Shown here: positions 3,414 to 64,000 of the stretch, piece by piece
Position numbering within the stretch: the stretch's first letter is position 1
Layout: each line of letters opens with the position of its first letter
DNA from: Octopus sinensis
Lineage: Eukaryota
DNA: 64,000 nt
Direction of reading: 5' to 3'
Assembly: GCF_006345805.1 (NCBI RefSeq)
Contig: NW_021831991.1
Coordinates: forward strand, 1 to 64,000
Made by a program: the position numbers and the translations under genes
Notes under the pieces: generated by a model
Databases searched by the model: none
What the model saw: only the letters and a program-made list of their open reading frames with translations
Told to the model about the DNA's origin: nothing

Positions 3414-3572
3414 CAATTATACGACGGGCTTCTTTCAGTTTCCGTCTACCAAATCCACTCACAAGGCTTTGGTCGACCCGAGGCTATAGTAGAAGACACT
3501 TGCCCAAGGTGCCACGCAGTGGGACTGAACCCGGAACCATGAGGTTCGTAAACAAGCTACGTACCACAGTTC
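3117..3572 (-). mobile_element. tRNA-derived SINE family A, full length
   Basis: Near-colinear with 51-434, with a longer (CA)n spacer. Confidence 0.85.
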
Positions 3573-3599
3573 CACCAATATTGTTTTGACCCATCGGTC

Positions 3600-4785
3600 T
3601 CAATGTGATCAACTTCTTTTATGGGTATTTTCTTTTTTTTTGTTATCCTGTTCTACACCGTTCTGGACAACATGTTATACTCTCATGGGAAGATAATATC
3701 TGAAAGAAATTCTTTCACAGTTGGCAATATGGTGAATGCCTTCGGTATTGGTCTTCTTGCCTGTCAAAGTTTTTCGCCTTTTATATTGTAGGCACTTGTT
3801 CGTGGATTGTGTTATGTAGCCGTCACAGTGGGTTGTTATGAACTTTCCGGAACTCCGCGTTAAGCTTTTGGCATGATCAATCCCTTAAATGACTTGTGTT
3901 TTACGTGCCTAGCACACATATGCTATCTTCTCAGTGAACTGATCCCTTATGTTCTGCCTAATGCTCTTTAGGGAAAGATCAGTATCGCCTCTTATTTCAT
4001 ACCTCTCCTAAACTTCATGAGCTATCCTAATTTTTGTTGTTGGTTCATGGTCAGAAACTAGAGCAAGATAGTCACTGGTCTCTTTCTTCGCCTGCAAATG
4101 GTGTTTCAGTGTCAACTGTACGTAATATGGCATCGGTACAGATTGAAGACCACAGCCACCATGCTTGCGTGTGAAGTATAGGCTGCCTACATCTTCATTG
4201 ATGTTGATGTTTCCAGTAGCACTGAACAGCTTGCGAACATCTATGTCATTAGGTTCTTGTGGTGACCAGTTCAGAAGACCAAACGAAGGTGTGAGGACAT
4301 GCATTGCAATATATGTTTACTAGAAGCTGAGAGTTCTGATAACAATATTCTCTTTAATCCCCCGAGATATTCATTTCTTGTCCTCTCCTTATTTATGGGT
4401 CCATCGAATCTGATATTCGCATCTTGTACGAGATACCTACAAATGTAACCTGACTGTAGAGGCTGCATTGTCAAGTCGCTTGTTCTTAGGATTTCAGAGG
4501 AGGGCACAAACGTCTCATACTTTATTGTTCAGAATACATATCTGGACTCACCAAATTTTATTCTAATGTTTGTAGAAAATTGGGTCATAAGGTCCAGTTG
4601 TTTTGGATATGGTTGATAATTGGCCCATGCAGTTTCAGGTCGTCGACAAAGAAAAGATTGGAGACACATCTGGATCAATTTCTCTGTTTACTATATTTTA
4701 TGAGCAAGTATTATAGGGAACTTAATGAGAGGATGAAGAATAACACAGACAGGCCATCAACCTGAATGATGCCATTTTGGGTGTG
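3600..4785 (-). mobile_element. Decayed R4/Dong-type non-LTR retrotransposon fragment (RT C-terminal part to zinc-knuckle region)
   Basis: Minus-strand translation gives LFFVDDLKLH, HVLTPSFGLLNW and LYFTRKHGGCGL, homologous to the plus-strand copy at 7280-9830. Many stops and frameshifts. Confidence 0.75.
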
Positions 4786-4789
4786 AATG

Positions 4790-6100
4790 CTATCCATTTC
4801 ACTGCCGACTCAAACAATGTTGCTCACTTCTCTTTTCAGCACTGCATTGATATATTTATTTTTGGTGCTCTTGTTTAGCAGGTGCTACCCGAGTGATACC
4901 ATACAGCATTCAAAGGCCGTCTGCACTGATCTCTATCACCTTCATTTCTTCTGAGGAAGAGTCTGTCAACATCACTGTTTCTGTGGAAGTTCCCAGCTGT
5001 TGTCAAGATTTTGCGGGTTTTGATATCTATGGAGCGGATTTCCTCTACAGACCAATCAATTATCCCAAATGTTGGGATCAGCACTGGTACTGCAAATGCA
5101 TTGTGGGATATTGCTTAGTTGTAAGAGGAGAGTTCCGATTGCCATATTTTCTTAAGTCTGGTGTAATATTCTCGGGTCACAATATCTTTATTCACAGTGC
5201 CTTCATATGATATATTTTCGCCTATGCCTAGGTACTTGTGACATTCTTTGTGTGGAATGGGAGAGATAAAGATATCGTTGATACACAGGTTTTGGGTTTG
5301 GGAGACTGACTTTGCTCTTTCTATAACCAAATATGAACACTTGTTTTAGCCAAATTGCATGCCTGCGTCAGCAGATAATGTTGTCAATTCCAGTTGTTTT
5401 TGGCATTGGTAGTCTACAAAGAAATTATTTGAAGATCCTAGCATGTAACCATTAGTTTTCTGCAGTGGGAACGATAATGGATTCATAGTCAAAATGAAAA
5501 GAAGTACAGAAAGGCTATATTCCCGGAATATTCCCTTTCAAATGACTATACTATCAGAAACAATTATTCTGTTCTCAGTCGTAATGGTTGTCCATGTTTT
5601 TGTGAGTCTCTCTATAGTAGCAATTAAGGTAGTAGATACTTTACCAGATGTATGTACTTCAACAGACATGAATGAGAGATTGAATCGAATGCATTCATAT
5701 AGTCAAGCCATGCGGTCACAAAATGTCTACGTTGTTTTCTTATTTCAGACAGAATAGCTTTGTTTATTAAAAGTTGTTCAGCATATCCCCACACTTTCTT
5801 CTTTTCACTAGCCTCTTCATCAGTCACAATGTTGATCGACTCACAATGTTCCTGGAGGAATTGGTTGACGCCACGTGTGTACAGTTTGTACATAATATTT
5901 AGACAAGAAATGGGCCTGTAGTTTCCTGTTATCTCGGTGATTTATGTTAGCTTCTTGTACCAATATCAAATTATTAGGTCCCTTCCAGGTGCCTTCCCCT
6001 TCTGCAGTTTGGCTACTGCTATAGTGAAAGTTTATGAATCAATTTTCTGTTTTACTCTTAGTGTTGGTACAATATTCTCTCTCAATTGTATTCAACCATG

Positions 6101-6132
<32 letters not shown>

Positions 6133-6500
6133 ATATAAGAGCTACTGCTCTTTGTATATAAATATATCGTTGAGTTGATGTGTTGAAATCTGCATGCATT
6201 CACCCAAGTGTGTGCATCTATTCACATAAGAATCTCTTATGGACATTTCTGAAATGTCTTGCAAATATCAGTAATAAATTGGATTTGGAGAATCCGCATT
6301 TGTTTTACTCTTTCTCTGCAGAACCCAGTTTTCCAGTTTTTTTGTGCAAATTTGTTGATGCATAACCTATGATGATATGTAAAAATGAGAACTGATAGTC
6401 AGGGAACAAGTGCTGTAAGTTCTGCATTAATTCACTCTAAATGTTCTCTTTTACTTGTACTTTTGACTGCTCATTTACATCTGCTGGGCAGCTGACCTCT
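4790..6500 (-). mobile_element. Decayed R4/Dong-type non-LTR retrotransposon fragment (RT N-terminal part through thumb)
   Basis: ORF fragments MYKLYT...KKKVWGYAEQLLINKAIL...AWLDYMNAFDS (5624-5893), KYLGIGENISY...EYYTRLKKIWQSELS (5115-5330) and LIPTFGIIDW...DVDRLFL (4875-5084). A (TA)n run interrupts it near 6100. Boundaries approximate. Confidence 0.8.
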
Positions 6501-7279
6501 ATGGGCGTGTGCGTGGGGTGAGTGTGTGTATTTGTGTGAGTAGTATCTGCGTGTGTGTATGTGTGTTTGTCTGTGCGTGTATGAGAGAAGGAAAGAGAGA
6601 GGGAAAGAGAGAGAGAGGGGGAAGAAATAGAGAGAACTCGGTTACAAATAAGTTGTAAAGTTTCTCTATGCAGAGTTAATATTTATGCAAAGGGAATCAT
6701 TAACACATCTCCCACAATAAATAGGGCACAAAATGTAAGTATTTCAGCTGTTCGAAGTAGTTTCATTTAAAAGCATTGCAGTTATCCTTGAAGTAAAGAT
6801 TTATAAATATTTCAGAGAGAAATAATAGCCATGGGAAGCAACTCCGTATCGGGGATTTATTCATTCATGGGAGGCAACTCTGCAAATATTTCCCCCGGTA
6901 ATTTCCCGTTTACCTTTGCTACTTTTTCCTTTTTACTTTCTTTGTTTTTCTTACGTCAAATGTAGACAAATACTTGTATAGGTATTAAATTGTCCTTATA
7001 TCTAGATCTAAAATAATCGATCACGTATATGATGAGAGATGATCGATTATCATTGTCCCAACTGTTTCTTATTTGCAGTAAAGGCAGTGTACATTATTCA
7101 GCCTGGCTTTTACATCTTAATTTGTTAGGTTCCGGTTTGAGTTATTCTGCTTTTTCTAACAGGTGCAGCATGGACGTAGGATTTCCTTTATTATCACGTA
7201 CGCAGGGGAAATTTATCATTGTACGGAGAACATACATACATACGTCAACTGTGATCCAGAAACTCCATGATGGAAAAGC

Positions 7280-9830
7280 ACCCGGAGAGACTTGATTCTT
7301 GGATATTGGTAAAAGAAGCTAACATTCTACCGACCATGTCTTATTAATCTGTACCAGCAAGCTTTCATTAGGAACAGTAGCATACCACACTGGTTAGCTC
7401 TGGCAGAGACAAAATTGATCCTCAAATATAGAACCACCCACATGGCAAAAAACTACCGGCCAACTGCATGCCAAAACTTAATGTATAAGATATATACAGA
7501 ATGTTTAAACCTATTCCTCCAAGACCATTGTGAAGCCAATAACATTATTACAGCAAAGCAAGCAGCTGGGAAGAAGGGAGTCTGGGGATGTGCTGAGCAA
7601 TTGTTAATCAACAAAAACTGTGATGTCAGAGGTGCGAGAGCATTAGTGGAACCTAGTTTCAATGTGACTAGACTACAAGAAAGCCTCTGACTTTGTTCCC
7701 CACTGATGGATGCTAGAAGCCCTTCAACTTGCTAAAGTTCCAGTGAGAATATTCAAAGCCATAGCTGACCTGACTTCATCGTGGGCCACCATCTTGAAGT
7801 TAGACACAAAGAATGACTGTATTATCACCGATAGAGTAGTGTCACAAAGGCATATTCCAAGGAGACAGCCTCTCTCTGTGATGTTGTTTATACTTTCTGT
7901 AAACCCTTTGTCATTCATGTTAAGGAAGACTGAAGGATATCTTACTGGTTCACAAGGAAAACAGAAATATCAAAATTTTATACTGTTTCTTTGTGGATGA
8001 CTTAAAACTTTATGCAAAGAATATGCATGAGATGAAAAAGAGCCTTGACCATGTTACAAATCCCTCAATAGATATAGGGTTGGTGTTTGGTCAGGATAAA
8101 TGTTATATGGTTGTGAAAAGGGGAAAACTATATACCAGACTAGTAACATCTTCATCAATGATTTGACTGTTTCCTCTGTATCTGACGAGAAATGTTACAG
8201 GTATCTAGGGGTGGATAAAATTATATCTTACAATATCACCTGTAACAAAACAGGTGTCACTAAAGAATATTACAGTCGAATAAAGAAAATTTGAACCTCA
8301 GAACTCTTTGCATTCATGTTCCACAATGTGTTTACAGTGCCAGTACTCATACCAATATTTGGGCTGCTTGATTGGACACTTGATGAAATCCGAGCCATTG
8401 ATGTGTTAACCCGAAAAATACTAACAAGCACACATAATTTCCACATAAACTGTGTCGTAGACCTTCTCCAACTTAAACGAAAACAAGGCGGCAGAGGCTT
8501 AACATCAATCCAAAATGCCTTTGAAAATCACATCATATCTTTTCGGTAACATCTTCTAGCCACCAAGTATCCAAATGCAAGTTTGCATACGTGAGGCTGA
8601 AAACTTCATAAGAATTGGAAGGCAGCTCCTTGTCTGATAACCTTGAAGATATGCCCAAAGCAAAGAGATCGCATGACTCTACATTAAACGTATCATCAGA
8701 TGAAACGACGAGCGTATATGAGCAGAAGACGATGCATGGGTATGTCAGTAGAAAGCCCCGTGATGATAGTAACGTCGATCATCAAATCAATTTATTATGG
8801 ACCAATGGCCGGATTCCTACCTTCCACTTTGAAGGGTATGCATTTGCTATCCAGGGACATGAAATATCAACCAAGTTCCTGATGTGCAAAAGGTATAGAG
8901 ATAGATGAAACACCATAATATGTGAGAAGCGTTGTAGACTTTGCGGAGTTTTGGAGACTTTTGGAGTTTGGTCAGGATAAAATTGTTATATGGTTGTGGA
9001 AAGGGTAAAACTATGAACCAGACTAGTAATATCTCCATTAATGATTTAACTGTTTCCTCAGTATCTGATGAGGAATGTTACAGGAATCTAAGGGTGGATG
9101 AAAATATACATTACAATGGCACCTTACAAATATACCTTACAATGGAAGAGCCGTAAAATGTGACAACCGATGCAGACTTTGTGGAGTTCACACTGGCGAC
9201 ATCCTCCACATCATAAGAAGTTATCCAAAAATATAATCACCGTATTGTCTATCAGTGAGACATAACGTTGTAGCTAGGACACTCTACAACGAAATCCGTC
9301 GGAAGGATAATCTCGAGGACAAAGGAATAAAAACACACAATATGGTAGAAGTCATAGCCACTCATACTGAAAAGGAATACTGGTGGAATGTACTAGTGGA
9401 GACCCCAATAAAATTTAAGCACAACAGACCTGATATAACGATTTGGAATAGAAAAGAGAAACTGTGCACAGATGTGGAAATTAGCTGCCCATCGAATGTT
9501 AAAATAAAACTGAATATCAGTGAAAAAGAGAACACCTATGCTGAACTATTGAGAAATCTAGAGTTACTCTATCCAGAGTACAAGTTCAGGTTTATACCTG
9601 TAATTATTGGGACCCTGGGATATGTAACACACTGCCTAAATTCCAATCTTAAGAAATTGGGCTTCTCAAAACCAGAAATGAGAAAGCTAATTCGAAGGCT
9701 ACAAATCCAATCTATCACTGGTACTGTAAATTTCTGTAAAACTTTCCAGAAGTTTATCATTTAAATATATATGAGCATGCCTAGATATGTAACTATATGC
9801 ATGAGAATACATATATAAAACATAAAAATC
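7280..9830 (+). mobile_element. Decayed R4/Dong-clade LINE (RT + CCHC knuckle + REL endonuclease), 5' truncated
   Basis: KNYRPTACQNLMYKIYT...QAAGKKGVWGCAEQLLINK; FVDDLKLYAK near 7990; YRYLG; GGRGL; CRLCG...HII near 9170; RHNVVA...NRPDI...VEISCP...KENTY...PVIIGTLG (9255-9764). Confidence 0.88.
9255..9764 (+). pseudogene. Restriction-like (REL) endonuclease domain remnant of the R4/Dong LINE
   Basis: 169-aa open frame with RHN, PD..(D/E) and K...Y motifs typical of REL non-LTR elements. Confidence 0.85.
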
Positions 9831-10910: not shown

Positions 10911-10915
<5 letters not shown>

Positions 10916-11380: not shown

Positions 11381-11469
<89 letters not shown>

Positions 11470-11475
11470 TAATAA
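10911..11475 (+). mobile_element. Non-coding (TAA)n-tailed SINE-like element, copy 1 (5' truncated)
   Basis: Body of about 467 bp (aaaagatgggctacagc...ctctcactca) plus a long (TAA)n tail. Homologous to 11478-11986 and 13271-13805. Confidence 0.75.
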
Positions 11476-11477
11476 TT

Positions 11478-11947: not shown

Positions 11948-11986
<39 letters not shown>
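11478..11986 (+). mobile_element. Non-coding (TAA)n-tailed SINE-like element, copy 2 (5' truncated)
   Basis: Directly tandem to copy 1, same 3' end and tail, with scattered substitutions. Confidence 0.75.
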
Positions 11987-11988
<2 letters not shown>

Positions 11989-13223: not shown

Positions 13224-13268
<45 letters not shown>

Positions 13269-13270
13269 AT
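12331..13270 (+). mobile_element. 3' end of a REL-LINE with (TAA)/(TGA)n tail
   Basis: ESLIIAAQDQALATN, YKRRHD, WYEH, HRRPDIVI...IIDVAIP and LQKAALLGTAHILRKVL, then a (TAA)(TGA)n tail. Confidence 0.8.
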
Positions 13271-19881: not shown

Positions 19882-20134
19882 TGTGTGTGTGTTGTGTGTG
19901 TGTGTGTGTGTGCGTGTGTATGTTTATTTGTTTGTGTTTCTCCTCCCACCATCGCTTGGCAGCCAATGCTGGTGTGTTTATGTCCCCGTCACTTAGCGTT
20001 TCGGCAAAAGAGGCAGATAAAATAAGTACTAGGCTCACAAAGAATAAGTCCTGGGGTAGATTTCTTCGACCTTTTAAGACGGTGCTGCAGCATGCTCGCA
20101 ATCAAATTACTGAAGCATTTAAAAGAAGAAAAGA

Positions 20135-20135
<1 letters not shown>
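19691..20135 (+). mobile_element. tRNA-derived SINE family A
   Basis: caggtacggcagtgtggtag...ggctccggtttcagtcccac...ccttgggcaag, then a TA/TG spacer and the family tail. Confidence 0.8.
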
Positions 20136-20207
<72 letters not shown>

Positions 20208-20269
20208 TAATACAGCTCTCAACACCACCTGTCTTCGTCTTTTATTGTCATTTGTGAATTCACCGTATA

Positions 20270-20324
<55 letters not shown>

Positions 20325-20613
20325 GTATATATATATATATATTATATATATATATATATATATTATATATATGCATATAATTATACATATATATACATAA
20401 ATATGTACACACACATATATATATATATACATATATATATACACATATATATATGCAATTATATATATAATGCATACATATGTATATATATATATACATA
20501 TATATAGATACATACATATATATGCATTATAAATATATATATATATATATATAATGTATATATATGTGCATATATATATATATATACGTATATATATTTA
20601 TACCCAATATACC

Positions 20614-20657
<44 letters not shown>

Positions 20658-20911
20658 GTATATATATGTGTATATATATATACATATATATATTTATACC
20701 CAATATACCCACAGTTATATATATATATATATGTATACGTATAATTGCAGCGTGGAAGGTGTTTATAACCCATTTAAATGCATACAAAAACCGTTAGATT
20801 CACTTCAACATTTAAATTTAATTTGCCAAAATATTTTAGTTGCTTTGAGACCGTGACCTGTTCACTGACAAAATTCCGTGCTGCATCTGAGAAAGTAACA
20901 GTCAGTTTATG

Positions 20912-20946
<35 letters not shown>

Positions 20947-21454
20947 TGTATGTATGTATGTATGTATGTATGTGTATGTATGTGTGTGTAAATGTGCGTA
21001 TGTATATATGTACATGGTTATGCATGTGTGCATGCCTATACGCATGTATGTATGCATGTAAGTATGTATTATGTATTTATGCATTTACATGAATATTTAG
21101 GTAAATGTGTGTGTGTATACATGTCTATCTATATGTGAACGTATGTTTATGTACTGATATGTTCCTATTCAAGTTGTATACATGATTGTTACTTTGTTGA
21201 AGGTTGTATACACACACATATACATACATATGCATATACATATGTATAGACACACACACATCTATATGTGTGTGTGTGTGTGTGTGTGCGTTTGTCCCTC
21301 TCACCACCATATAACGGTAAATGGATATAACATCTTAGATACATATAAGCACATATAACCTTACTTATACATATATACAAGTACACACAATCATATATAC
21401 ACATCTCTGTAATATATATCTCCGTAATATATATAAATTATAAATATATTTATA

Positions 21455-21522
<68 letters not shown>

Positions 21523-21528
21523 TATACA

Positions 21529-21564
<36 letters not shown>

Positions 21565-21576
21565 CATGTATATATG

Positions 21577-21612
<36 letters not shown>

Positions 21613-21615
21613 AAT
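20136..21615. repeat. About 1.5-kb field of TA/TATG/CA microsatellites, including a tandem unit of about 95 bp (tatacccaatatacccaca x2)
   Basis: Direct reading. Confidence 0.9.
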
Positions 21616-22210
21616 GTATACGTGCTAACCTAGTGAATGTTTTAGAAATAGATGTTAAATGCTGTTTTCAACTGAAGATAGCAAAGCATGTTCGTCATGC
21701 AAAGCGGGAAATCAATTAATATTGAAACATGTATTACTTATCCATGTATTCTAAGCAAGGGTAAGCCTATTTTTGAAATATTTATTGCATTGCTAGTGTG
21801 TATCTTTATTGTAACTTTTATGGTGATTTTTGGAGCATTGGCTCTGATTTTAGCAAGTGGTATTATAAACCCTAACTAATCTTAAGTTACTATATATATA
21901 TGCATGTATATATATATATATATATATATGTATGTTTGTATATATACACATATGTATGTCACAACCTAGGACCTTGAAGACTGCTTTAATGCAAGAAAGT
22001 ATACTAGTCCCATAATATTTGATATTCAATATTTCATCTCTTCAGTAAGACAATCTATACTTCATTCCATTCTACTATATATACTATTTATACTATATAT
22101 TCTATATTCTACATTAATATTATAAAGAATATAAATAAACATAAAAAACAGAGTTGGAATTCCTTTGAATAATATATATCCCTCTATACACAATCATACA
22201 AACCCCATTT

Positions 22211-22241
<31 letters not shown>

Positions 22242-22914
22242 GATAGATATATAGATATATAGATATATAGATATATATATATATACATACATATATATCT
22301 CAGACATGCTTTATCCTATACTATCAAGTTGGCCTCATAAAAGTGAAGGAGAAGAGTGGAGGAAATAGCGTATGATCTTGTAATGAGCATTTTAAAATCT
22401 GTTTCAACTTCAAGCGGTTCAGAAGTCGATAAACTTTCTTTTATGCCTCCAGTTATATATAATATGGTAAAACGTACACGCTCTGTCTAGATAATTCATT
22501 TATCGTACGAGAAATATTACACATTTTTTAATATTTTCAATAAGTTCTTAGTTTTATTACTTTGAAGATGCCCCCTACACTATATGACCTGAAATTATGT
22601 ATATAACATATATTGTGTCATCTTTCTTTTAAAATTATTTTACTTATACCTATAGTAAATGTGTTCGTTTCCAAGAAAGATACAACCTCAATCTCTGGAA
22701 TTTACCGAACAAGATTGATGAAGAAAAAATCTGGCAAACTTTTTAATATTCCATTTACAGAAAATGCAACTTAGCTCGCAACTTTATTCAAATCTGAAAA
22801 ACCGAAGTGTTTCGAGATTGCTGTTTCAATATTTATTAGCAGAGCTACATGCACCAAAAATTTCGAGCATAAATTTTTACATATTACTCTAGATAAAACT
22901 GAAGGATTCGTTTA

Positions 22915-23700
22915 TGTACGTATGTATGTATGTATGTATGTATGTATGTATGTATGTATGTATGTATGTATACATGAATGTGTTTATGCATGTATGTATG
23001 AAATAACCACTTAGTTATTTTTAAAACATCTGACTAGGAGTAAGACACTTCGATATAAAACTTAAGGATTGTTCTGGTCTGGTTGACCTATCCACCGCTA
23101 AGCCAGCGAGAGAATATCTGTTGTATATGAAAAGTGAATCCAGTTCCGGGCTCATTTCACTCACTATAATGAATTTGACGAACAGGTTGTTCTTGGATAA
23201 TACATTATAGAAAGAAACATGTAAGATTTTAAGAGGCTGGCTCACACGATAGAGTTTAACTTCGAACATGTAAGTCATATGTGTATGTATGTATGTATGT
23301 ATGTATGTATGTATGTATGTATGTATGTATGTATGTATGTATGAATATATATGTATGTATGTATGTGCGTGCGTGTGTGTCTGTGTGAGTGTATGCGTAT
23401 ACGTATGTATATATGCATGTGTCTACAAACGTTTATATATGTGTGCAGGTGTGCTTCTGCGGGTAAGTGTTTCCTTCTCTCTCTGTATATAATTGTTTAA
23501 ATATTTGAATGTTTGTATGTATGAATGTATGTATGTATGTATGTATGTATGTATGTATGTATGTATGTATGTATGTATGTATGTATGTATGTATGTATAG
23601 ATTGATGGATAGATGGATGGATATATGTATGTATGTAAATGGACGCATATATATATTTATATATATATGTGTGTGTGTGTGTGCATGAATGTATGTATTT
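22915..23700. repeat. (TATG)n and (TG)n arrays
   Basis: Three (TATG)n blocks near 22920, 23285 and 23525. Confidence 0.85.
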
Positions 23701-25092
23701 TCTTAACAAGTGTAAAAAATGGAATACACTGATTTCATATCAATAATTATAGTTAATAATGAGTCTCATACCTTTCAATGTATATATAACCTGATCAAAT
23801 AAGTTCTATTATATCGAACAGTCAGTTATCTTCACTCTACAGCAATTATCTTCAATCTACAGCAATATTTAGACATTCATAGAAAAGGAATTCGTTATTA
23901 AACTTCCCGAGCAATATGTTGTATTGTTATGTATTTTAATGACAATATCATGTGCTCTCACAAATGGCATCTTAATATTTTCAAATCACCTTCACCATAC
24001 TGCAATTTTCCTATTAATTATACCAAAACTGTGAAACAAGGTTGATGCTGTTGCAGTTTTGTCTTCGGTATAGTAGTTACTTACCGTCTTTGTCATATAT
24101 AGGTGGTTATTTGAATGGATGAATTACAGAGTGGCTATGCATAAATGAATGTTTAGAGATAAGTTTATTTAAATAGATACTAATTCATTCCTTGTCATAC
24201 AGTAAGACCCTGGCATAACCATACCGTTATATGATACAGCAATGATTACATTATCCTATTTGCCCTTTCTATTTTTGTAAGGTGATTTGTGATTTGAGGG
24301 AGTTTCTATTCCTATTTCAAGCAATTTAATAGATATTATAGAAGTTATATTGTTTTATTTAATGTAAAATTTAGATGTGTGTCAAAGCCCTTTTAAAATA
24401 CTCAGGATAGATATATTATATGGTATAATCCACGATAGCAGATTGGTGTACATATTTGTAAATAATTTCCTGTCTGTAATAGGAAATTGTTTTTCTAAGG
24501 AGATTTCCATTACATAGAACTAAATTGAGCTGCAACTGCATGGAATACATTTCTCATGTGAACAAGAGTGACAATGCAAAAATATTCCAACAAACATAGA
24601 GCAATTTTACAATTCACTATACGAAGTTATTGCATGCAATCGTAAAAACTGCACCAGAGACATATATATCGACACTGTTGCATCAGTTGAAATTTATTTT
24701 TCTGTTCTACAAAGCAGAAAAAAACTACATGGACTTGAATGTAGCTTATAACCAGTTGGTTCGTCTGGGCCACGCTGCTTGATTCTAATATGTAAGGTCA
24801 AACAGTTTAGGTAGACTGTTTAGGCATTATCAAAAAACAAAAAAACAAAACAAAGGCTTTATTTTTAAGATTTTATTTTGAGTTCGTTTTGGCATTTGTT
24901 TAAGAAATGCTTGTTGCATCTGCGTTGTATAATACTTTGTGTGTACTTGCAGACACTATTCTTATCTTTATGTTATGCAATTTCGAACGATTTATGAAAC
25001 GCTCAGTACAAACACGACTTACAAAGAATTCATCATTTTCACAATTTGAGCGTTTTTGCTTTAAGTATTCAAATAAAATTAAACCATTTATT

Positions 25093-27720: not shown

Positions 27721-28354
27721 GAAATAGATATTTCAATGCATTCAGTAAGCAAAAGTGTGCAATTCCATATGAAACATGGCCTCGAATGCATAACAATTAA
27801 ACTCACGCAGGCAAATGAATACCTTATCTAGTCAAATAAATAAATGGTTTATCCAGTAGGAAAATCAATACCTTAACCAGCAGACAAATCGATGAGTTAT
27901 CCAGTAACTGTTGACGACTTAAAATAGTACTCCAGTTATTGCCCATTCAGGTTTGAAAAAGTCAATACAATTAAAAGATAAATAAATCATTCAAAAGTTA
28001 AGAAAAATAAGAAATAAGACAGATTAAGAGTGCTAAATATTCAATGTGACTAAGTCGATATTTTTGCCCCTATTATAATTACACCCATGTACATTGAAAA
28101 ACAGGGACAAACAAGCACTTATAATTCATATATATAGTTCAAATATATAAACTTAAAATTAATCTTGTCGCTTATTTGGCATATCTTGTACTTAATGTTT
28201 TTCCTATGTGCGCACAAATACGTACATACATACATACATACATACAAACATACATACATACATACATACATACATACATACATACATACATACATACATA
28301 CATACTTACATACATACATACATACATACTTACATACATACATACATACATACA

Positions 28355-28500
28355 TTATTGGAGCCCTGGGATATGTAACACACTGACTAAATATCAATCT
28401 TCAGAAATTAGGCTTCTCAAAACCAGAAAGAATTATGCTAATTCGAAGACTACACATCTGATTCATCACTGGAACTGTAAATATATGCAAATCTTTCCAG
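28355..28500 (+). mobile_element. Very short 3' fragment of the R4/Dong LINE after a (TACA)n run
   Basis: attggagccctgggatatgtaacacactg...cactggaactgtaaa matches about 9605-9750. A paralog lies at 36288-36425. Confidence 0.8.
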
Positions 28501-37860: not shown

Positions 37861-39347
37861 ATGAAAGATGATATTTCGGAATTTCGTAGGAAACTAAGAC
37901 TTACCGAGGAATTTCATGGCAAACAAATAGATGATGAATTAATAGCTAGAAACAACAGCAATTACGCCCCTACCAAGGGAAAGAATAAAGCCTTAGACCG
38001 CTATTGTGACTACATAACTAATTTCTCTTTTCAATTCACCAAGAAACAAAAACACAACCCAAACTTTAACAAAAGAGAATGGATCGACCTCATCAAACTA
38101 AGAGAAGACAAAACAATAACAATTAAGGAGGCAGATAAGGGCAACGCGGTAGTATTAATGAATACAAACGATTATAAAAATTTAGTGCTATCCCTATTAA
38201 GAGATGAAACGTATTATGAAAGGGCCCAACAGTATAATCAGCAAAAAATAATGTATAACCTCAGGACATTAATCAACACATACCGAGAAGGACTCACGGA
38301 CAAGGAGTATGAATACATCACTAACTTCAAGTGCAAATCGAGTTTGTTCTACGGTATCCCTAAAGTACACAAAAGCCAAATTATTAGTGAAACATGCAAA
38401 ACATCTACCGATATACTCATCAAAATCCCTTCACCAAATGATCTTAAACTTAGACCGATAATAGCAGGGCCAGCATGTGAAACTCACCGCCTCAGCAATT
38501 TCTTAGACACACTTCTTAAACCTTTCCTAAAACACATCAAAAGTACGTAAGAGACGATATAGACATGCTCAACCACCTCCCTAAAACAGTCAATGAGAAA
38601 ACCCTTCTAGTATCCTTCGACGTAGTTAACCTTTATTCTAACATCCCTCACACCCTAGGAATAGAAGCGATCACCTTCTGGCTGAATAACTACTCCTTTG
38701 AACGCCCAACTCGTATAAACAAAGATCTTATAATAGAAGGACTTAGATTTATTTTAGAAAACAATTACTTTATTTTTGACAATAATTTCTACAGACAAAG
38801 ATCGGAAACAGCGATGGGCACGCGTACTGCGCCTTCTTTTGCCAAGCTAGTGATGGGATACCTCGAGAAAATACTCTACCAGATAACACTCGAGAAATAT
38901 GGAAACACCTTCTCCACCTATATTCAGAACAACTGGAAAAGATACCTCGACGATTGTTTTATCCTCTGGGATAAAAGTATAGAGAAACTTGAGGAATTTA
39001 AAATACTATTAAATGGAATAAATGATAATATACAATTCACGATGGATCATAACGAAGAAGAATTACCATTTTTAGACATCCTCATTAAGAAAACCGGCAA
39101 CAAAATAGAGACAGATATCTATTATAAACCGACAGACTCCAAACAGTACCTACCCTTTGATTCATGCCACCCACGACACACTAGAATAAATGTCCCTTTT
39201 TGTTTAGCTAGAAGGATTTGCACCATAATATCAGACACAAACACCCGACACACACGTCTCCAGGAACTTAGAACCACACTCATAAATAGAAACTATCCAC
39301 AGCCCCATGTGGAAGGCCCAACTGCGGAATCTGTGTCATCTTGGTAG
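37861..39347 (+). pseudogene. Penelope-type reverse transcriptase (frameshift near 38550; thumb/linker deleted after RNYP)
   Basis: ORFs 37861-38550 and 38565-39347 carry the Penelope RT motifs listed for the element. Confidence 0.88.
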
Positions 39348-44769: not shown

Positions 44770-45002
44770 TTATACTGAATCAGTCTGGTCAATTTCATCT
44801 TTAAGTTTCTCGGTTTCCTCATCTACTTCAATAACCTTCTTGGGTGGTAGTATGGCTAATTTCCCAAAAACGGATTGATGTTTGTTTAAAAAGTTTTGGA
44901 TGCTTGGGAATTCGTAAACAATTTCACCAGTATGGTAGTTTGGAGATTCAGTGGTATCTGTCTCAGGTAGTAAATGTTGCATCCCACGTTCAGTCAGTGT
45001 AC
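44770..45002 (-). CDS. SLC23: SLC23/NAT family transporter, terminal coding exon
   Basis: Acceptor tttacag|gt; (G)TLTERGMQHLLP...YEFPSIQNFLNK...LAILPPKK...DSV*. Matches the GT.EERG C-terminal pattern of the family. Phase 1. Symbol is family-level only. Confidence 0.85.
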
Positions 45003-48528: not shown

Positions 48529-48624
48529 CTGGTATCGTGTTGTCTAAGAAGATAGCCGATAATGTTCCAACAAAGGTTTGAGTTCCCAGAACAATTTTTA
48601 ATACTTGATCTAGCTCAAAATTAC
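48529..48624 (-). CDS. SLC23: SLC23/NAT family transporter exon (96 bp)
   Basis: ttttgtag|gt aat ttt gag...ata cca g|gtatgt; (G)NFELDQVLKIVLGTQTFVGTLSAIFLDNTIP(G). Phase 1 to phase 1. Confidence 0.9.
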
Positions 48625-50033: not shown

Positions 50034-50304
50034 CTGTATTGATGTCATTTGGATATGTGTAAAGCCATGATGAAGAAACCCAACTCAGACCCAATGAAGT
50101 TCCAATAATCAATGTATTGCGTGCGTTTAAAGCTGTCTTTTGCAGATTGGTGAGACCTACTGATAACATCATAGTAAGCCCAGTGAAATTGATGGCTCCC
50201 ACTACAGGATCTGGAATTGTAGCTAAAGAAGCAGCCACTTTACCCAATATCGCCATGATGATAAGCAAAACACCTGCTATGTTCAATACAATACGACTTG
50301 CAAC
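50034..50304 (-). CDS. SLC23: SLC23/NAT family transporter exon (271 bp)
   Basis: ttttag|gttgca...aatacag|gtaaga; VASRIVLNIAGVLLIIMAILGKVAASLATIPDPVVG...SVGLTNLQ...NARNTLIIG...INT(G). Aligns from memory with SVCT VGSRRV...PDPILGG...AVGLSNLQ...INTG. Confidence 0.93.
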
Positions 50305-51524: not shown

Positions 51525-52227
51525 GGAGATTAGGCCGCAATGTCTAGGCTTTCTCGTTGGTTCACACAGAGATAGTTGAGAGGCTTGGAATGCATTCCTG
51601 TTGGAGTTCAATTACTATGTGTCATGCTCATTTCATTTTCAAAGATTTATTTACTGGTATTTAATTTTATGAAAACTACTCAGACAGCATTTTATAACAT
51701 GTCTGATGATTTCACCCAATACTCAGACTTTGCCTACAGTGCACAACACTCTAAAACAGGCCGATATAATAAGAGAAAATTCGTGAAAAAGGCAGAAGGT
51801 AGATGTAAAAAGAGAAAGGTTGAAAACACCGGGAAACGAAAAAAAAAGTTATGATAAGACTGAATGGATAGGGGCCTTGAGTCTGTGGTACAGCTGGTCA
51901 ATCCGGTGAGGGTGGTATTTTCCAATTTGCCACGAGGAAATTATCTGTATGTTTACATCTTACTGAATATATCAGCTTTGGAATTCAGCATTCTGGTGGA
52001 ATTCTTAGCTCTGAAAAGGAACTGTGATCTTTCAGCTACGCATAGCTTACATTATTTGATCCAGTCTGTCTTTGTTCACTCAATTGTTGATTTAGATTTA
52101 GTCGCTCTTATTAGAGCGTATATTATTATAAAAGAAAATAATACATAATTACAGTTTTGTATGTATGTATGTATGTATGTATGTATGTATGTATGTATGT
52201 ATGTATGCATGTATGCATGTATGTATG

Positions 52228-52331
<104 letters not shown>

Positions 52332-52521
52332 ATATATATATGTATATATAAATTAGTTGTTATCGCCATATTAATATGGCAGTCTTATAGATATAAGACT
52401 AAAGCTGTCGCTGATTAGCTCCATGAGGCCATCGCCTTAAGCTAGCTATTTGACACACAAACTGTGTCCATTATAACCTTCGAACAAGGGAGGTCAGCCG
52501 CTTCACACTGCCAGTCAGACA

Positions 52522-52564
52522 GCTACAGACGCGTTTCAGGGTATTTGCCCTTTGTCAATGTAGC
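52522..52564 (-). ncRNA. Minimal type I hammerhead ribozyme (U3-A8 variant), sense to the SLC23 pre-mRNA
   Basis: Minus strand gctaca-ttgacaa-aggg caaata ccct-gaaa-cgcg-tc-tgtagc. Confidence 0.82.
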
Positions 52565-52767
52565 TTTAGTCTTATATCTATAAGACTGCCATATTAATAT
52601 GGCGATAACAATTAATTTCCAGTAACGCTGCCGTAATCTCTTTTAGAGAGACTTAGTAATTTTAATATTTCTATAATTGAAAACAGGTGAATGTATTCCA
52701 CCGAAACTAGGTAAATAAAACCTTCGAACAGAGACGATCAGTGGCGACACCTGCTGGGTCTGACTAC

Positions 52768-52810
52768 GCTACATTGACAAAGGGCAAATACCCTGAAACG
52801 CGTCTGTAGC
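52768..52810 (+). ncRNA. Minimal type I hammerhead ribozyme (U3-A8 variant)
   Basis: Stem I gctaca/tgtagc; core ttgacaa; stem II aggg/ccct; gaaa; palindromic stem III acgcgt; GUC cleavage triplet (52802-04). Confidence 0.82.
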
Positions 52811-53035
52811 TGTCTGACTGGCAGTGTGAAACGGCTGACCTCCCTTGTTCGAAGGTTATAATGGACATAGTTTGTGTGTCAAATAGCTAGCTTAAGGCGA
52901 TGGTCTCATGGAGCTAATCAGCGACAGCTTTAGTCTTATATCTATAAGACTGCCATATTAATATGGTGATAACAATTAATTTCCAGTAACGCTGCTGTAA
53001 TCTCTTTTAGAAAGACTTAGTAATTTTAATATTTC

Positions 53036-53065
<30 letters not shown>

Positions 53066-53071
<6 letters not shown>

Positions 53072-53649
53072 GTTGTCTATTGACTATTTATACATGCTAG
53101 GCCACTGGTGGTGATATTTATAACGAATATTCGCCACGCTATAAATGTTTCTTATGAATATGTTCTTAGCATTCTCGAAGATTCAGCTCGGCATTGTATT
53201 TATTGCTGACTGTAAATGCGCCTGCGCGCGGTATTTTGAAAAATTATAACATATAATGATGGGGCACGTGTTATCTTGTCTCTGAATTATAAGTTAGTTG
53301 TTGAGGCCGGTTACTGACGAGAATTCGCCTGGTGGAGAATATTGTTCTGCTAAATTACCTATTAAAGAATGGCAAATAATAATATTATTTTCTAAAGAAT
53401 TTCGAAACCATGGTATAACCGTTAAATAACAAGGTAAATTTTTTTCTTTTTCATTTACTTCGAAAGTTGCTATTAAATTGTGATTTTGGCCGTGTTGGCT
53501 GCTATTTCTAGCATGTAAAAATTACTTGTTAAAGGGTAATTTTCTATTTTGAAATATGAATATGTTGTCTATTGACTATTTATACATGCTGGGCCACTGG
53601 TGGTGATATTTATAACGAATATTCGCCACCCTATAGATGTTTCTTATGA

Positions 53650-53684
<35 letters not shown>

Positions 53685-54542
53685 CGTGTGAGTGTGTATG
53701 TTTTACTTGTTTCGGTCATTAGGGTGCGCCCATGCTGAAGAACTTTTAGTCTTGAAGAACTTTTAGTCGAATGAATCGTCCCCAGTACTTATATTTTTCT
53801 AAGCCTGGTGTCTATACTATTGGTTGGTTGCCAAACCACTACGGTTCGCGTAAAAACAGTAAAATATAGAACAATGAGAACAAAACAGTAAAAACAAACG
53901 ATGAGAGCTGTTAAGTCAAGATGATGGAAAAATTATTCTGAACGCTGTTTACTGTTTTTACTGCTTTTACATTTTATTGTTTTTACTGTTTTGTTCTTAC
54001 TGCCCTGTTCTTGTTACCACTTTTTCCCTCCGCAAAAATATCCCAAATTTTATTTAATTTGCTTTGCGGGAAGGATTGTTTCAACGAAGTCGCGTCTTGT
54101 CCTTACATTCGGAAAGCGGAGAAGACGAAACAGGGACAATTGAAGAAGGGGCATATTCCTTGTGTTGTATGTCTTGTATTCTGTTTTTTCCGTTATTTGA
54201 AAAAAAGTTCGATTCTATGTTTTTGTTTTTATGTTTTCGTTTCTCATTGAGTTCAAAGTCCTATACCCATATATATACATATATATATAGGTATGTACAT
54301 ATATGTATGTATATATGCATATATGTATATATTACTTATATTATGATATGATGGAACGCCACGCATCCTTTTCCAAGTAAGTTTTATCTATCTATCTATC
54401 TATCTATCTATCTGTATATATATATTTATTTTTATATATATATATATATATATGTAGGTCCCGGGTTGATTCGGGGTTAACCACAGTAAATAAGGTACTC
54501 AATACTTGAATGAAACAGTTCTAGTCCTGTAGAAGCTCCTTC

Positions 54543-54580
<38 letters not shown>

Positions 54581-55167
54581 ATATACATATGTTGTCTATT
54601 GACTATTTATACATGCTAGGCCACTGGTGGTGATATTTATAACGAATATTCGCCACGCTATAATGTTTCTTATGAATATGTTCTTAGCATTCTCGAAGAT
54701 TCAGCTCGGCATTGTATTTATTGCTGACTGTAAATGCGCCTGCGCGCGGTATTTTGAAAAATTATAACATATAATGATGGGGCACGTGTTATCTTGTCTC
54801 TGAATTATAAGTTAGTTGTTGAGGCCGGTTACTGACGAGAATTCGCCTGGTGGAGAATATTGTTCTGCTAAATTACCTATTAAAGAATGGCAAATAATAA
54901 TATTATTTTCTAAAGAATTTCGAAACCATGGTATAACCGTTAAATAACAAGGTAAATTTTTTTCTTTTTCATTTACTTCGAAAGTTGCTATTAAATTGTG
55001 ATTTTGGCCGTGTTGGCTGCTATTTCTAGCATGTAAAAATTACTTGTTAAAGGGTAATTTTCTATTTTGAAATATGAATATGTTGTCTATTGACTATTTA
55101 TACATGCTGGGCCACTGGTGGTGATATTTATAACGAATATTCGCCACCCTATAGATGTTTCTTATGA

Positions 55168-55202
<35 letters not shown>

Positions 55203-56061
55203 CGTGTGAGTGTGTATGTTTTACTTGTTTCGGTCATTAGGGTGCGCCCATGCTGAAGAACTTTTAGTCTTGAAGAACTTTTAGTCGAATGAATCGTCCC
55301 CAGTACTTATATTTTTCTAAGCCTGGTGTCTATACTATTGGTTGGTTGCCAAACCACTACGGTTCGCGTAAAAACAGTAAAATATAGAACAATGAGAACA
55401 AAACAGTAAAAACAAACGATGAGAGCTGTTAAGTCAAGATGATGGAAAAATTATTCTGAACGCTGTTTACTGTTTTTACTGCTTTTACATTTTATTGTTT
55501 TTACTGTTTTGTTCTTACTGCCCTGTTCTTGTTACCACTTTTTCCCTCCGCAAAAATATCCCAAATTTTATTTAATTTGCTTTGCGGGAAGGATTGTTTC
55601 AACGAAGTCGCGTCTTGTCCTTACATTCGGAAAGCGGAGAAGACGAAACAGGGACAATTGAAGAAGGGGCATATTCCTTGTGTTGTATGTCTTGTATTCT
55701 GTTTTTTTCCGTTATTTGAAAAAAAGTTCGATTCTATGTTTTTGTTTTTATGTTTTCGTTTCTCATTGAGTTCAAAGTCCTATACCCATATATATACATA
55801 TATATATAGGTATGTACATATATGTATGTATATATGCATATATGTATATATTACTTATATTATGATATGATGGAACGCCACGCATCCTTTTCCAAGTAAG
55901 TTTTATCTATCTATCTATCTATCTATCTATCTGTATATATATATTTATTTTTATATATATATATATATATATGTAGGTCCCGGGTTGATTCGGGGTTAAC
56001 CACAGTAAATAAGGTACTCAATACTTGAATGAAACAGTTCTAGTCCTGTAGAAGCTCCTTC
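53066..56061 (+). repeat. Near-identical tandem duplication, unit about 1519 bp (about 53066-54543 and 54585-56061)
   Basis: Units differ only by a few homopolymer or microsatellite length changes by eye. Junctions lie in (TA)n. Confidence 0.92.
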
Positions 56062-56734: not shown

Positions 56735-56988
56735 CTTTGTTATACCAATAAGGGCAATGTGTGTGCTGTACGAACTTGTTGCGTGTGAAGCACCCATAAG
56801 TCCAGCTAGTACACCCGCTAGACCTTCAGAAAACAGCCCACGGTTAATTGCATGTCTCGGAGGTGGGGGTACGGAGCATAGTATTGAGGCAGCGTAGTAA
56901 TCACCCATAGATTCAATAATTGAATTTATTGTCGACAGGAAAAATCCGAGAAAAATAGCTATTTGAAATTTAGGTGGTCCATACTGAC
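56735..56988 (-). CDS. SLC23: SLC23/NAT family transporter exon (254 bp) containing TM8 and the NAT signature
   Basis: ttttcag|gtcag...acaaag|gtaaga; (G)QYGPPKF...SIIESMGDYYAA...PPPPRHAINRGLFSEG...SSYSTHIALIGITK. Phase 1 to phase 0. Confidence 0.95.
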
Positions 56989-63959: not shown

Positions 63960-64000
63960 CTGGGTAAGGAAAGGAAAACCAGGGTGCTCTGTGTATCAAA
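63960..64000 (-). CDS. SLC23: SLC23/NAT family transporter exon, partial (runs off the window end)
   Basis: Minus strand LIHRAPWFSFPYP(G)|gtattt, matching family APWFxxPYP. Phase 1 fits the next exon at 56988. Confidence 0.85.

What the first reader, a model, noticed from the sequence alone, without database searches (positions are those of the whole stretch)
56735..56776. SLC23/NAT transporter with a non-canonical substrate-signature motif
Seen: the motif reads SSYS-T-H-I-A-L-I-G-I-T-K. Known: the NAT signature is [Q/E/P]-N-x-G-x4-T-[R/K/G], with Q/E in nucleobase transporters (UapA, UraA) and P in mammalian ascorbate transporters (SVCT: P-N-I-G-V-L-G-I-T-K). Here position 1 is Thr, the near-invariant Asn is His and Gly is Ala, while the TM8 acidic pair (IESMGDY), all visible splice sites and reading frames are intact. 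Inference: a functional paralogue with altered substrate or ion coupling rather than a pseudogene.
Basis: partly seen in the sequence, partly recalled or inferred. Interest (0 to 1): 0.7.

Follow-up and report, generated by a model that had tools for sequence, protein, structure and literature searches.

The report
Octopus SLC23 transporter, swapped His/Asn pair
The odd motif is real and conserved: it belongs to a cephalopod-only branch of the vitamin-C/nucleobase transporter family, in which a supposedly irreplaceable asparagine became histidine while its contact histidine on a neighbouring helix became asparagine, so this looks like a working transporter with a remodelled pocket and not a broken gene.

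Summary
The motif S-S-Y-S-T-H-I-A-L-I-G-I-T-K is encoded on the minus strand at 56735-56776. It aligns without gaps to the SVCT1 S-S-S-P-N-I-G-V-L-G-I-T-K. The window holds only the last four and a half exons of an Octopus SLC23 gene. This gene is the upstream copy of a young tandem pair and matches one O. vulgaris locus at 97-99.6% nucleotide identity.

The gene is not a pseudogene by sequence. The matching O. vulgaris gene, its tandem paralogue and the O. bimaculoides orthologue all keep intact 599-codon, 11-exon reading frames, with dN/dS of 0.25-0.36.

T-H-I-A is identical in Octopus species and in Argonauta. x-H-[IV]-A marks a clade with 60/60 bootstrap support, which includes transcript assemblies.

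The three deviations are not equally unusual:
- Ala7 is common (18 of 77 canonical relatives).
- Thr4 recurs in uncharacterised invertebrate paralogues.
- His5 is rare.

Every His5 protein also has Q-N in place of the Q-H motif in TM1. In UapA structures these two residues touch, so I read the change as a reciprocal His/Asn exchange.

The Na1 ligands (Glu, Asp, Ser) are kept. The Na2/gate residues of human SVCT1 (Ser110, Phe112, Phe436) are replaced. The substrate is unknown. This is a new variant of a known family and is moderately interesting.

The parts
63960..64000 (-). Last 41 nt of exon 7 (...LIHRAPWFSFPYP + first base of Gly). Donor is CCAG|gtattt, phase 1. The rest of the exon and exons 1-6 lie outside the window.
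56735..56988 (-). Exon 8 (254 nt). It encodes TM8 and the unwound start of TM10, including both functional motifs.
   Evidence: It is 100% identical to O. vulgaris L004 49001-49254.
56897..56917 (-). TM8 motif I-E-S-M-G-D-Y. The Glu and Asp are the equivalents of SVCT1 E334/E341 and D338/D345, which are ligands of Na1 and the substrate.
   Evidence: PMC10011568, PMC11219872
56783..56785 (-). CAC His in G-A-S-H-A-T, at the position of SVCT1 Asn377 (human) / Asn384 (mouse). His here is shared by a large 'GxxH' group of SLC23 paralogues. The named members are nearly all molluscs, and many members are unnamed.
56735..56773 (-). Extended TM10 NAT signature S1-Y2-S3-T4-H5-I6-A7-L-I-G-I-T12-K13. Thr4 is at 56762-56764, His5 at 56759-56761 and Ala7 at 56753-56755.
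   Evidence: numbering from PMC5972032
50034..50304 (-). Exon 9 (271 nt; VASRIVLN...NDINT + G). It contains Leu (50176-50178) at the position of the human SVCT1 gate residue Phe436.
48529..48624 (-). Exon 10 (96 nt; NFELDQVLKIVLGTQTFVGTLSAIFLDNTIP + G). It is closer to the tandem paralogue A (99.0%) than to gene B of O. vulgaris (94.8%).
44770..45002 (-). Exon 11, the last coding exon (GTLTERGMQHLL...DQTDSV), including the TAA stop at 44770-44772.
3568..8632 (-). Segment 90-95% identical to the 5' flank of this same gene in O. vulgaris. It is the duplicated upstream flank of the next tandem paralogue (gene A), which should start just beyond window position 1.

Best explanation
Shown. The window carries the 3' half of an Octopus SLC23 (NAT/NCS2, Pfam Xan_ur_permease) gene. 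It is copy B of a recent tandem pair, annotated 'SLC23 member 1-like' in O. vulgaris. It belongs to a subfamily whose named members are all molluscs, and within that to a clade defined by two changes that always occur together: TM10 signature x-H-[I/V]-A-L-I-G-[I/V]-T-K, and TM1 Q-N in place of Q-H. The gene is intact and under purifying selection. Its O. bimaculoides orthologue is confidently predicted to adopt the SVCT1 elevator fold.

Inferred. In canonical NATs the TM10 Asn braces TM10 against the TM1 His. In cephalopods the two residues have changed places, so a His-Asn contact between TM1 and TM10 is kept in reversed polarity. That would explain how an otherwise 'irreplaceable' Asn could be lost without loss of function.

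Inferred. Transport is still driven by Na+ at the Na1 site, because Glu, Asp and Ser are all kept. The substrate pocket and outer gate are remodelled. Thr replaces the specificity-determining Glu/Gln/Pro. Pro and Ile replace Ser110 and Phe112 of TM3. Leu replaces Phe436 of TM12. Tyr2 is kept. The protein therefore most likely carries a substrate other than the standard nucleobases or ascorbate, or carries them with different kinetics or Na+ stoichiometry. The substrate itself is unknown.
For: Family and fold:
- Pfam PF00860 scores 150 bits for the half encoded in the window and 235 bits for orthologue P0174.
- The spliced C-terminal half aligns to SVCT1 299-517 with a single one-residue gap.
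- The AF2 model of P0174 has pLDDT 87.3 and pTM 0.87. Its best Foldseek match is human SVCT1, with a TM-score of 0.91 normalised to the target.

Intactness and selection:
- All in-window junctions are AG/GT and in frame.
- The same locus in O. vulgaris (L004, 97-99.6% nucleotide identity) gives an intact 599-codon, 11-exon ORF. So do paralogue A (L006) and O. bimaculoides (L005).
- dN/dS is 0.13 for the motif exon against Logan contigs, whose introns are only 71-78% identical while the exon is 91.7% identical.
- dN/dS is 0.27-0.36 for the C-terminal half and 0.25-0.36 for the full length.

Conservation:
- S-T-H-I-A-L-I-G-I-T is identical in Octopus species and in Argonauta hians.
- His5, Ala7 and TM1 Asn are present in 22 of 22 clade members. 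These fall into six clusters at 90% identity, with subclades 46-53% identical to the octopod proteins. The clade is recovered in 60 of 60 NJ bootstraps.
- Clade members P0177 and P0178 are uninterrupted ORFs on contigs of about 2 kb from six SRA runs, so they are transcripts.

Pairing:
- N52 of P0174 aligns to His51 of human SVCT1.
- Kosti 2012 (PMC3405029) lists H86-N409 as a critical polar interaction in UapA.
- The UapA cryo-EM preprint (10.1101/2024.08.23.609436) states that Asn409 holds TMS10 by binding the backbone of His86, and binds its side chain through a water molecule in the empty state.
- A chiton paralogue changes both positions together to Val and Met.

Ion sites: Na1 is formed by E341, D345 and S390 in mouse SVCT1 (PMC10011568), and all three are kept. 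Human Na2 is held by Phe112 (cation-pi) and Ser110 (PMC11219872). These are Ile and Pro here.
Against: No coordinates could be read from the model, so the His-Asn contact in the octopus protein was not measured.

The co-occurrence of TM1 Asn and TM10 His traces to one ancestral event. It is therefore not statistical evidence of coupling.

In UapA the substrate-bound contact is to the backbone of His86, not its side chain.

Scallop paralogues have TM1 Q-N with Asn5 kept, and many mollusc paralogues have Q-Q. TM1 His can therefore be lost without any change at position 5.

The TM1 exon of the window's own copy lies outside the window. It is inferred from the 97-99.6% identical O. vulgaris locus.

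The only annotated O. vulgaris product of this copy (CAI9715241.1) skips exons 3-5 and 7-8, including the motif exon. Transcription of the motif exon from copy B is therefore unverified.

No transport data exist for any member.
Confidence: 0.6

Rival explanations
1. The TM10 Asn to His and TM1 His to Asn changes are separate functional innovations, not a compensating pair. Placing a titratable His at the first turn of TM10, next to Na1 and the substrate, changes ion coupling, for example to proton dependence, pH gating or a different Na+ stoichiometry.
For: His5 sits one residue after the specificity position and two after the Na1 ligand Ser. The human SVCT1 Na2 ligands Ser110 and Phe112 are replaced (PMC11219872). 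A second lineage acquired His5 independently (..TTYGGHIGSIGITK), and its TM1 state is unknown. TM1 His can be lost without His5 (scallops and Q-Q paralogues).
Against: Asp338/345, the residue that distinguishes Na+ symport from H+ symport (it is His in UraA; PMC10011568), is kept in all 22 clade members. The two changed positions are known contact partners. Nothing here tests coupling.
Confidence: 0.22
2. The clade is functional, but the particular copy in the window (tandem copy B) is a redundant duplicate drifting towards loss or mis-splicing.
For: The duplication is young (dS 0.058 between A and B). On the B branch there are 14 synonymous and 14 non-synonymous changes, against 10 and 7 on the A branch. 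The annotated O. vulgaris product of B lacks the motif exon. Between the window and O. vulgaris B, dN/dS is 0.63, although this rests on very few changes.
Against: The 599-codon ORF and all ten GT-AG introns are intact in O. vulgaris B. The five exons in the window are intact. dN/dS on the B lineage is still about 0.27-0.36, well below 1. Exons 7-9 are identical between two genomes. The A/B difference in branch counts is small.
Confidence: 0.12
3. The unusual codons are sequencing or assembly errors, or chance similarity in non-coding DNA.
For: None found.
Against: The codons are identical in an independent assembly. The residues are identical in four other cephalopod species and in several SRA-derived contigs. 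The exon aligns to SVCT1 with E about 1e-22.
Confidence: 0.01

Closest known systems
Mammalian SVCT1/SVCT2 (SLC23A1/A2), Na+-coupled ascorbate transporters (PDB 7ytw, 8jew)
   Same: Best sequence and fold match: 33% identity and a TM-score of 0.91. Same exon-level architecture around TM8-TM10. Na1 ligands Glu, Asp and Ser are conserved, as are T12 and K13 of the signature.
   Different: S-S-S-P-N-I-G is S-Y-S-T-H-I-A here. TM1 Q-H is Q-N. Ser110, Phe112 and Phe436 are Pro, Ile and Leu. SVCT1/2 are vertebrate-only according to PMC5972032, so this protein is not their orthologue despite the RefSeq name 'member 1'.
SVCT4 / rat SNBT1 and the 'extended SVCT4' group of invertebrate NATs (predicted nucleobase transporters; PMC5972032)
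   Same: Shares Tyr2 (S-Y-S), which stacks on nucleobases, the E-x-x-G-D motif in TM8 and overall sequence (about 33-36% identity).
   Different: The substrate-binding Glu/Gln4 is Thr. Asn5, TM1 His, TM3 Phe and TM12 Phe are invariant or nearly so in 77 canonical relatives, and all are replaced here.
Non-canonical NAT branches of unknown function: vertebrate SVCT3 (SLC23A3) and fungal UapD-like proteins (PMC5972032)
   Same: All are conserved family members that fail the canonical motif criteria and are presumed to carry other substrates.
   Different: SVCT3 lacks the TM8 motif and keeps TM1 Q-H. The cephalopod clade does the reverse: it keeps TM8 and changes TM1 and TM10. There is no close sequence relationship.
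Aspergillus nidulans UapA (H86-N409 and Q85-T416 network between TMS1 and TMS10)
   Same: UapA supplies the experimental basis for treating the two changed positions as a contact pair. The Gln (TM1) and Thr12 (TM10) partners are kept in the cephalopod clade.
   Different: UapA is an H+ symporter with Q-H and Q-N-N-G motifs. N409 is reported as irreplaceable there, whereas here His occupies that position in a conserved protein.
Tandem SLC23 expansions in oysters (PMC8590024)
   Same: Mollusc SLC23 genes multiply by tandem duplication, as the A/B pair does here.
   Different: The oyster copies were described at the level of copy number and expression. Motif changes were not analysed there.

Membership tests
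SLC23 / NAT / NCS2 superfamily (Pfam PF00860 Xan_ur_permease) | Significant match to the family profile above the curated cut-off | tested here: met
   The window C-terminal half scores 150 bits (cut-off 27, E 1e-43). Orthologue P0174 scores 235 bits.
SLC23 / NAT / NCS2 superfamily | 14-TM 7+7 inverted-repeat elevator fold with half-helices TM3 and TM10 | tested here: met
   Tested on orthologue P0174, because the window has only half the gene. The AF2 model has pLDDT 87.3. Foldseek finds human SVCT1 with TM-score 0.91, then UapA and UraA.
Canonical NAT (criteria of Kourkoulou et al. 2018, PMC5972032) | [quoted passage not shown] | tested here: met
   I-E-S-M-G-D-Y at 56897-56917.
Canonical NAT | TM1 motif Gln-His | tested here: not met
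   This region is outside the window. The 97-99.6% identical O. vulgaris locus and all orthologues read A-V-Q-N-I-L, and the Asn aligns to His51 of human SVCT1.
Canonical NAT | TM10 signature [Q/E/P]-N-x-G-x4-T-[G/R/K] | tested here: not met
   The sequence is T-H-I-A-L-I-G-I-T-K. Positions 4, 5 and 7 deviate, while T12 and K13 are kept.
SVCT1/SVCT2 ascorbate transporters | Extended motif S-S-S-P-N-x-G, with Ser2 and Pro4 | tested here: not met
   S-Y-S-T-H-I-A. The clade is separate from the SVCT1/2-type sequences in the tree.
SVCT4/SNBT1-type nucleobase transporters | [T/S]-[F/Y]-[A/S]-[Q/E]-N-x-G, with an aromatic residue at position 2 and Gln/Glu at position 4 | tested here: not met
   Tyr2 is present but position 4 is Thr and position 5 is His. 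All 77 canonical relatives have E/Q4 and N5.
Na+-coupled SLC23 (SVCT-type Na1 site) | Na1 ligands: TM8 Glu and Asp, plus Ser3 of the extended motif | tested here: met
   By alignment, E, D and S are present in the window and in 22 of 22 clade members (ligand identities from PMC10011568 and PMC11219872). Actual Na+ dependence cannot be tested with these tools.
Na+-coupled SLC23 (second Na+ site of the human SVCT1 model) | Ser110 and Phe112 of TM3 | tested here: not met
   Pro111 and Ile113 in P0174 and in O. vulgaris gene B. This region is outside the window.
Any SLC23 subfamily | Demonstrated substrate and ion dependence | not testable with these tools
   No member of the cephalopod clade or of the wider mollusc subfamily has been assayed in the literature I could search.

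The most novel reading that the evidence does not exclude
The cephalopod clade is a new functional class of SLC23 transporter. Moving the only titratable His of the TM1-TM10 brace to the first turn of TM10, together with loss of the Na2/gate aromatic residues, would create a carrier with a different coupling mode (one Na+, or pH-gated) and a substrate that is neither a nucleobase nor ascorbate. It would also be a natural demonstration that the 'irreplaceable' NAT Asn can be replaced if its TM1 partner is exchanged reciprocally.
Probability: 0.2. Interest if true: 0.65.

Novelty: new variant of a known kind. Interest (0 to 1): 0.42.

Why it matters
NAT/SLC23 specificity is usually read from three short motifs. 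The TM10 Asn and the TM1 Gln-His are treated as nearly invariant, and the Asn as irreplaceable.

Here a conserved, selected animal clade breaks both rules at once, at two positions that touch each other. This gives a simple, testable prediction: a reciprocal H/N swap should rescue the single mutants in UapA, XanQ or SVCT1.

It also shows that RefSeq names such as 'SLC23 member 1' are misleading for cephalopods and other molluscs. These animals hold a large, uncharacterised radiation of paralogues with remodelled pockets, so motif-based assignment of ascorbate or nucleobase transport to them is unsafe.

Tried and rejected
I used stop-to-stop ORFs and later tblastn with orthologue P0018 instead.
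- Looked for a second copy of the motif exon in the window and found none.
- Tried to read coordinates of the AF2 model to measure the Asn52-His392 distance. No structure file is exposed, so the contact rests on the literature.
- Tried an independent test of the swap on the second His5 lineage (GGHIGSIGITK). The last homology search returned only exon fragments. The longest environmental contigs reach back only to the TM3 exon, not to TM1.
- An Rfam scan of the whole window found nothing.
- The long ORFs at 37.9-39.3 kb are a degraded retroelement and not part of the gene.
- Literature searches for described mollusc or cephalopod SLC23 motif variants found only oyster tandem expansions.
- Considered that the 'GASH' His might be the relocated TM1 His. 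Rejected, because gastropod relatives have both TM1 Q-H and GxxH.
- Considered scallop Q-N/Asn5 proteins as the direct sister (an intermediate state). The NJ tree does not support that grouping (1 of 60 bootstraps).

Full report
**1. Observation**

The reverse complement of window 56735-56776 reads S-S-Y-S-T-H-I-A-L-I-G-I-T-K. It closes a 254-nt minus-strand exon (56988-56735) bounded by ttttcag|G and AAG|gtaaga. The exon's 84 residues align without gaps to mouse and human SVCT1 (7ytw_A 317-400, 8jew_A 310-393; E about 1e-22). T-H-I-A therefore falls exactly on P-N-I-G, and I-E-S-M-G-D-Y falls on the TM8 I-E-S-I-G-D-Y. UraA aligns with E-N-I-G at the same place.

**2. Gene and organism**

Only one copy of the exon is present in the window. 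Using the full-length relative P0018, I mapped the in-window exons on the minus strand:
- the last 41 nt of exon 7 (64000-63960)
- exon 8 (56988-56735)
- exon 9 (50304-50034)
- exon 10 (48624-48529)
- exon 11 (45002-44770, with a TAA stop)

All junctions are AG/GT and in phase. The spliced 297 residues align to SVCT1 299-517 with a single one-residue gap and score 150 bits against Pfam PF00860. The N-terminal half lies beyond position 64000.

Named relatives place the window in an octopod:
- Argonauta hians GAB1597431.1 (P0018)
- O. bimaculoides XP_014779337 (P0174)
- O. sinensis XP_029645500 (P0292)
- two adjacent O. vulgaris genes, CAI9715240 (A) and CAI9715241 (B)

Window 34711-64000 matches the O. 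vulgaris gene B locus (L004, OX597814.1) at 97-99.6% nucleotide identity, and exons 7-9 are 100% identical. In O. vulgaris, genes B and A lie on the same strand about 48.6 kb apart. Window 3568-8632 is a 90-95% copy of B's own 5' flank, so the whole unit was duplicated in tandem.

**3. Is it a live gene?**

From L004 I reconstructed gene B as an intact 599-codon ORF in 11 exons, with GT-AG at all ten introns. Gene A (L006) and O. bimaculoides (L005) have the same structure, and the latter translates exactly to P0174.

Selection estimates:
- Full-length dN/dS is 0.36 for A against B (dS 0.058), 0.25 for A against O. bimaculoides, and 0.27 for B against O. bimaculoides.
- By parsimony, the B branch carries 14 synonymous and 14 non-synonymous changes, and the A branch 10 and 7.
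- For the window's C-terminal half, dN/dS is 0.27 against O. bimaculoides and 0.36 against gene A.
- Against Logan contigs L001-L003, the motif exon is 91.7% identical while the flanking introns are 78% and 71% identical. dN/dS there is 0.13 and the motif is unchanged.

One caveat applies. The only annotated O. vulgaris product of gene B skips exons 3-5 and 7-8, so inclusion of the motif exon in B transcripts is unverified.

**4. How unusual is the motif?**

An exhaustive HMMER scan with the exon found 894 relatives. Among the 169 aligned stretches from the nearest relatives (the 150 listed hits plus the 17 fragments):
- position 4 is E, Q or G in most and T in 15
- position 5 is N in 141 and H in 5
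- position 7 is G in 118 and A in 40
- the full T-H-x-A combination occurs only in the octopod orthologues

In 77 canonical SVCT4-like full-length proteins:
- TM1 His is present in 76 of 77
- E/Q at position 4 in 77 of 77
- Asn5 in 77 of 77
- TM3 Phe112 in 73 of 77
- TM12 Phe436 in 77 of 77
- Gly7 is Ala in 18

So Ala7 is ordinary, Thr4 recurs in uncharacterised paralogues, and His5 is the rare change.

A large and diverse group of SLC23 paralogues has G-x-x-H-A-T-T-S-Y and very variable signature positions. Its named members are nearly all molluscs: bivalves, gastropods, a chiton and cephalopods (many members are unnamed contigs). None has been characterised. Tandem SLC23 expansion is already documented in oysters (PMC8590024).

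**5. The cephalopod clade and the TM1 partner**

An NJ tree of 139 full-length proteins recovers all His5 sequences as one clade in 60 of 60 bootstraps. The octopods (S-T-H-I-A) sit next to three further groups (S-G-H-V-A, S-N-H-I-A and S-S-H-I-A) that are 46-53% identical to the octopod proteins. These further groups are uninterrupted ORFs on contigs of about 2 kb from six SRA runs, so they are transcripts. Their cephalopod origin is inferred only from their position in the tree.

The sister group consists of gastropod (Q-H, x-N-I-A) and Solemya (Q-Q, T-N-I-A) proteins. Next come Mytilus and scallops (Q-N, x-N-x-V), and then a chiton (Q-V, G-M-I-S).

Every His5 protein has Q-N in TM1 in place of Q-H (22 of 22). 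That Asn aligns to His51 of human SVCT1. O. vulgaris gene B, the window's locus, reads A-V-Q|N-I-L across the exon 1-2 junction.

The literature supports a contact between these two positions:
- Kosti et al. 2012 list H86-N409 and Q85-T416 as the critical polar interactions between TMS1 and TMS10 of UapA, and call N409 irreplaceable (PMC3405029).
- The 2024 UapA cryo-EM preprint reports that Asn409 holds TMS10 by binding the backbone of His86. In the empty state it binds the His86 side chain through a water molecule.

I therefore read the cephalopod state as a reciprocal His/Asn exchange across a conserved helix-helix brace. The chiton Val/Met pair is a second, hydrophobic, joint change at the same two positions.

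The hypothesis has clear limits. It rests on one evolutionary event, so the co-occurrence is not statistical evidence. TM1 His is also lost in relatives that keep Asn5 (Q-Q and Q-N). I could not measure the distance, because the model coordinates are not exposed.

**6. Ion and substrate sites**

Na1 in SVCT1 is formed by the TM8 Glu and Asp, Ser3 of the extended motif, and a backbone carbonyl (PMC10011568, PMC11219872). All of these are kept in the window and in 22 of 22 clade members. The Asp that distinguishes Na+ carriers from H+ carriers is among them.

In human SVCT1, Na2 is held by Phe112 (cation-pi) and Ser110, and Phe112 stacks on Phe436 to form the outer gate. In octopus these are Ile113, Pro111 and Leu443. 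The Leu codon lies in the window at 50176-50178.

Tyr2, which stacks on the nucleobase ring, is kept. The residue that pairs with the substrate in nucleobase carriers (Glu/Gln4) is Thr. The AF2 model of P0174 is confident (pLDDT 87.3) and matches SVCT1 with a TM-score of 0.91.

My inference is a Na+-coupled elevator transporter with a changed pocket and gate. Its substrate is unknown.

**7. Verdict**

However, the Asn to His change is best explained as one half of a TM1-TM10 swap, and Gly to Ala is commonplace.

By the motif criteria of PMC5972032 this is a non-canonical NAT, comparable in status to SVCT3 or the UapD-like proteins. It is a new variant of a known family. Nothing in this work required a referred step.

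Noticed in passing
window 3568-8632 (compare L004 1-7872): This segment is 90-95% identical to the 5' flank of the same gene in O. vulgaris. It is the duplicated upstream region of the next tandem paralogue (gene A), whose first exon should lie just beyond window position 1.
   Followed up: partly
window 52244-54453 and 54540-55972 (intron 8): Both segments match a single stretch of the O. vulgaris locus (L004 49929-52146) at 97-98% identity. A piece of about 1.5-2.2 kb is therefore tandemly duplicated in the window relative to that assembly.
   Followed up: no
window 48529-48624 (exon 10): This exon is 94.8% identical to O. vulgaris gene B but 99.0% identical to paralogue A, whereas exons 7-9 are 100% identical to B. 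O. sinensis gene A carries a variant closer to O. vulgaris B (it shares Ile and Pro at two of the variable residues). The pattern suggests gene conversion or exchange between the tandem copies.
   Followed up: partly
window 37861-39347 (+): Two adjacent ORFs (229 and 260 aa) with a weak reverse-transcriptase match (RVT_1, 24 bits, below the cut-off). This is probably a degraded retroelement in the intergenic region.
   Followed up: partly
window 10912-11476, 11476-11987, 13208-13805: A repeat of about 520 bp, present in three copies here and in four copies inside introns of the O. vulgaris gene (L004 22.6, 24.9, 27.4 and 37.1 kb) at 82-98% identity. It is a dispersed repeat family of unknown type.
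   Followed up: no
window 20135-20737 and 20001-24000: A long imperfect (AT)n array of about 600 bp, inside a 4-kb stretch with only 24-29% G+C. Several other di- and tetranucleotide arrays are present (435-553, 21427-21591, 23282-23698, 28218-28355, 52160-52350).
   Followed up: no
loci L007-L014 (environmental contigs; e.g. L008 2841-3086, L011 4244-4501): A second, unrelated animal lineage of SLC23 genes also has His at signature position 5 (..T-T-Y-G-G-H-I-G-S-I-G-I-T-K). It has short introns and an I-D-S-I-A-D-Y motif in TM8. Its TM1 exon is not on the contigs, so whether TM1 also lost its His is unknown.
   Followed up: partly
proteins (e.g. P0190, P0191, P0194, P0226): Many 'GxGH' SLC23 paralogues (the named ones are from bivalves) have Q-Q in TM1 and carry a His in TM3 (Q-G-G-S-H-T-F) at the position of SVCT1 Phe112. 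This is another apparently coordinated remodelling of the binding site in an uncharacterised group.
   Followed up: no
P0175 and P0180 (O. vulgaris CAI9715240/CAI9715241): Both annotated O. vulgaris products are exon-skipping isoforms: A lacks exons 3-5, and B lacks exons 3-5 and 7-8. Intact full-length ORFs nevertheless exist at both loci, so the public annotation under-represents these genes.
   Followed up: partly
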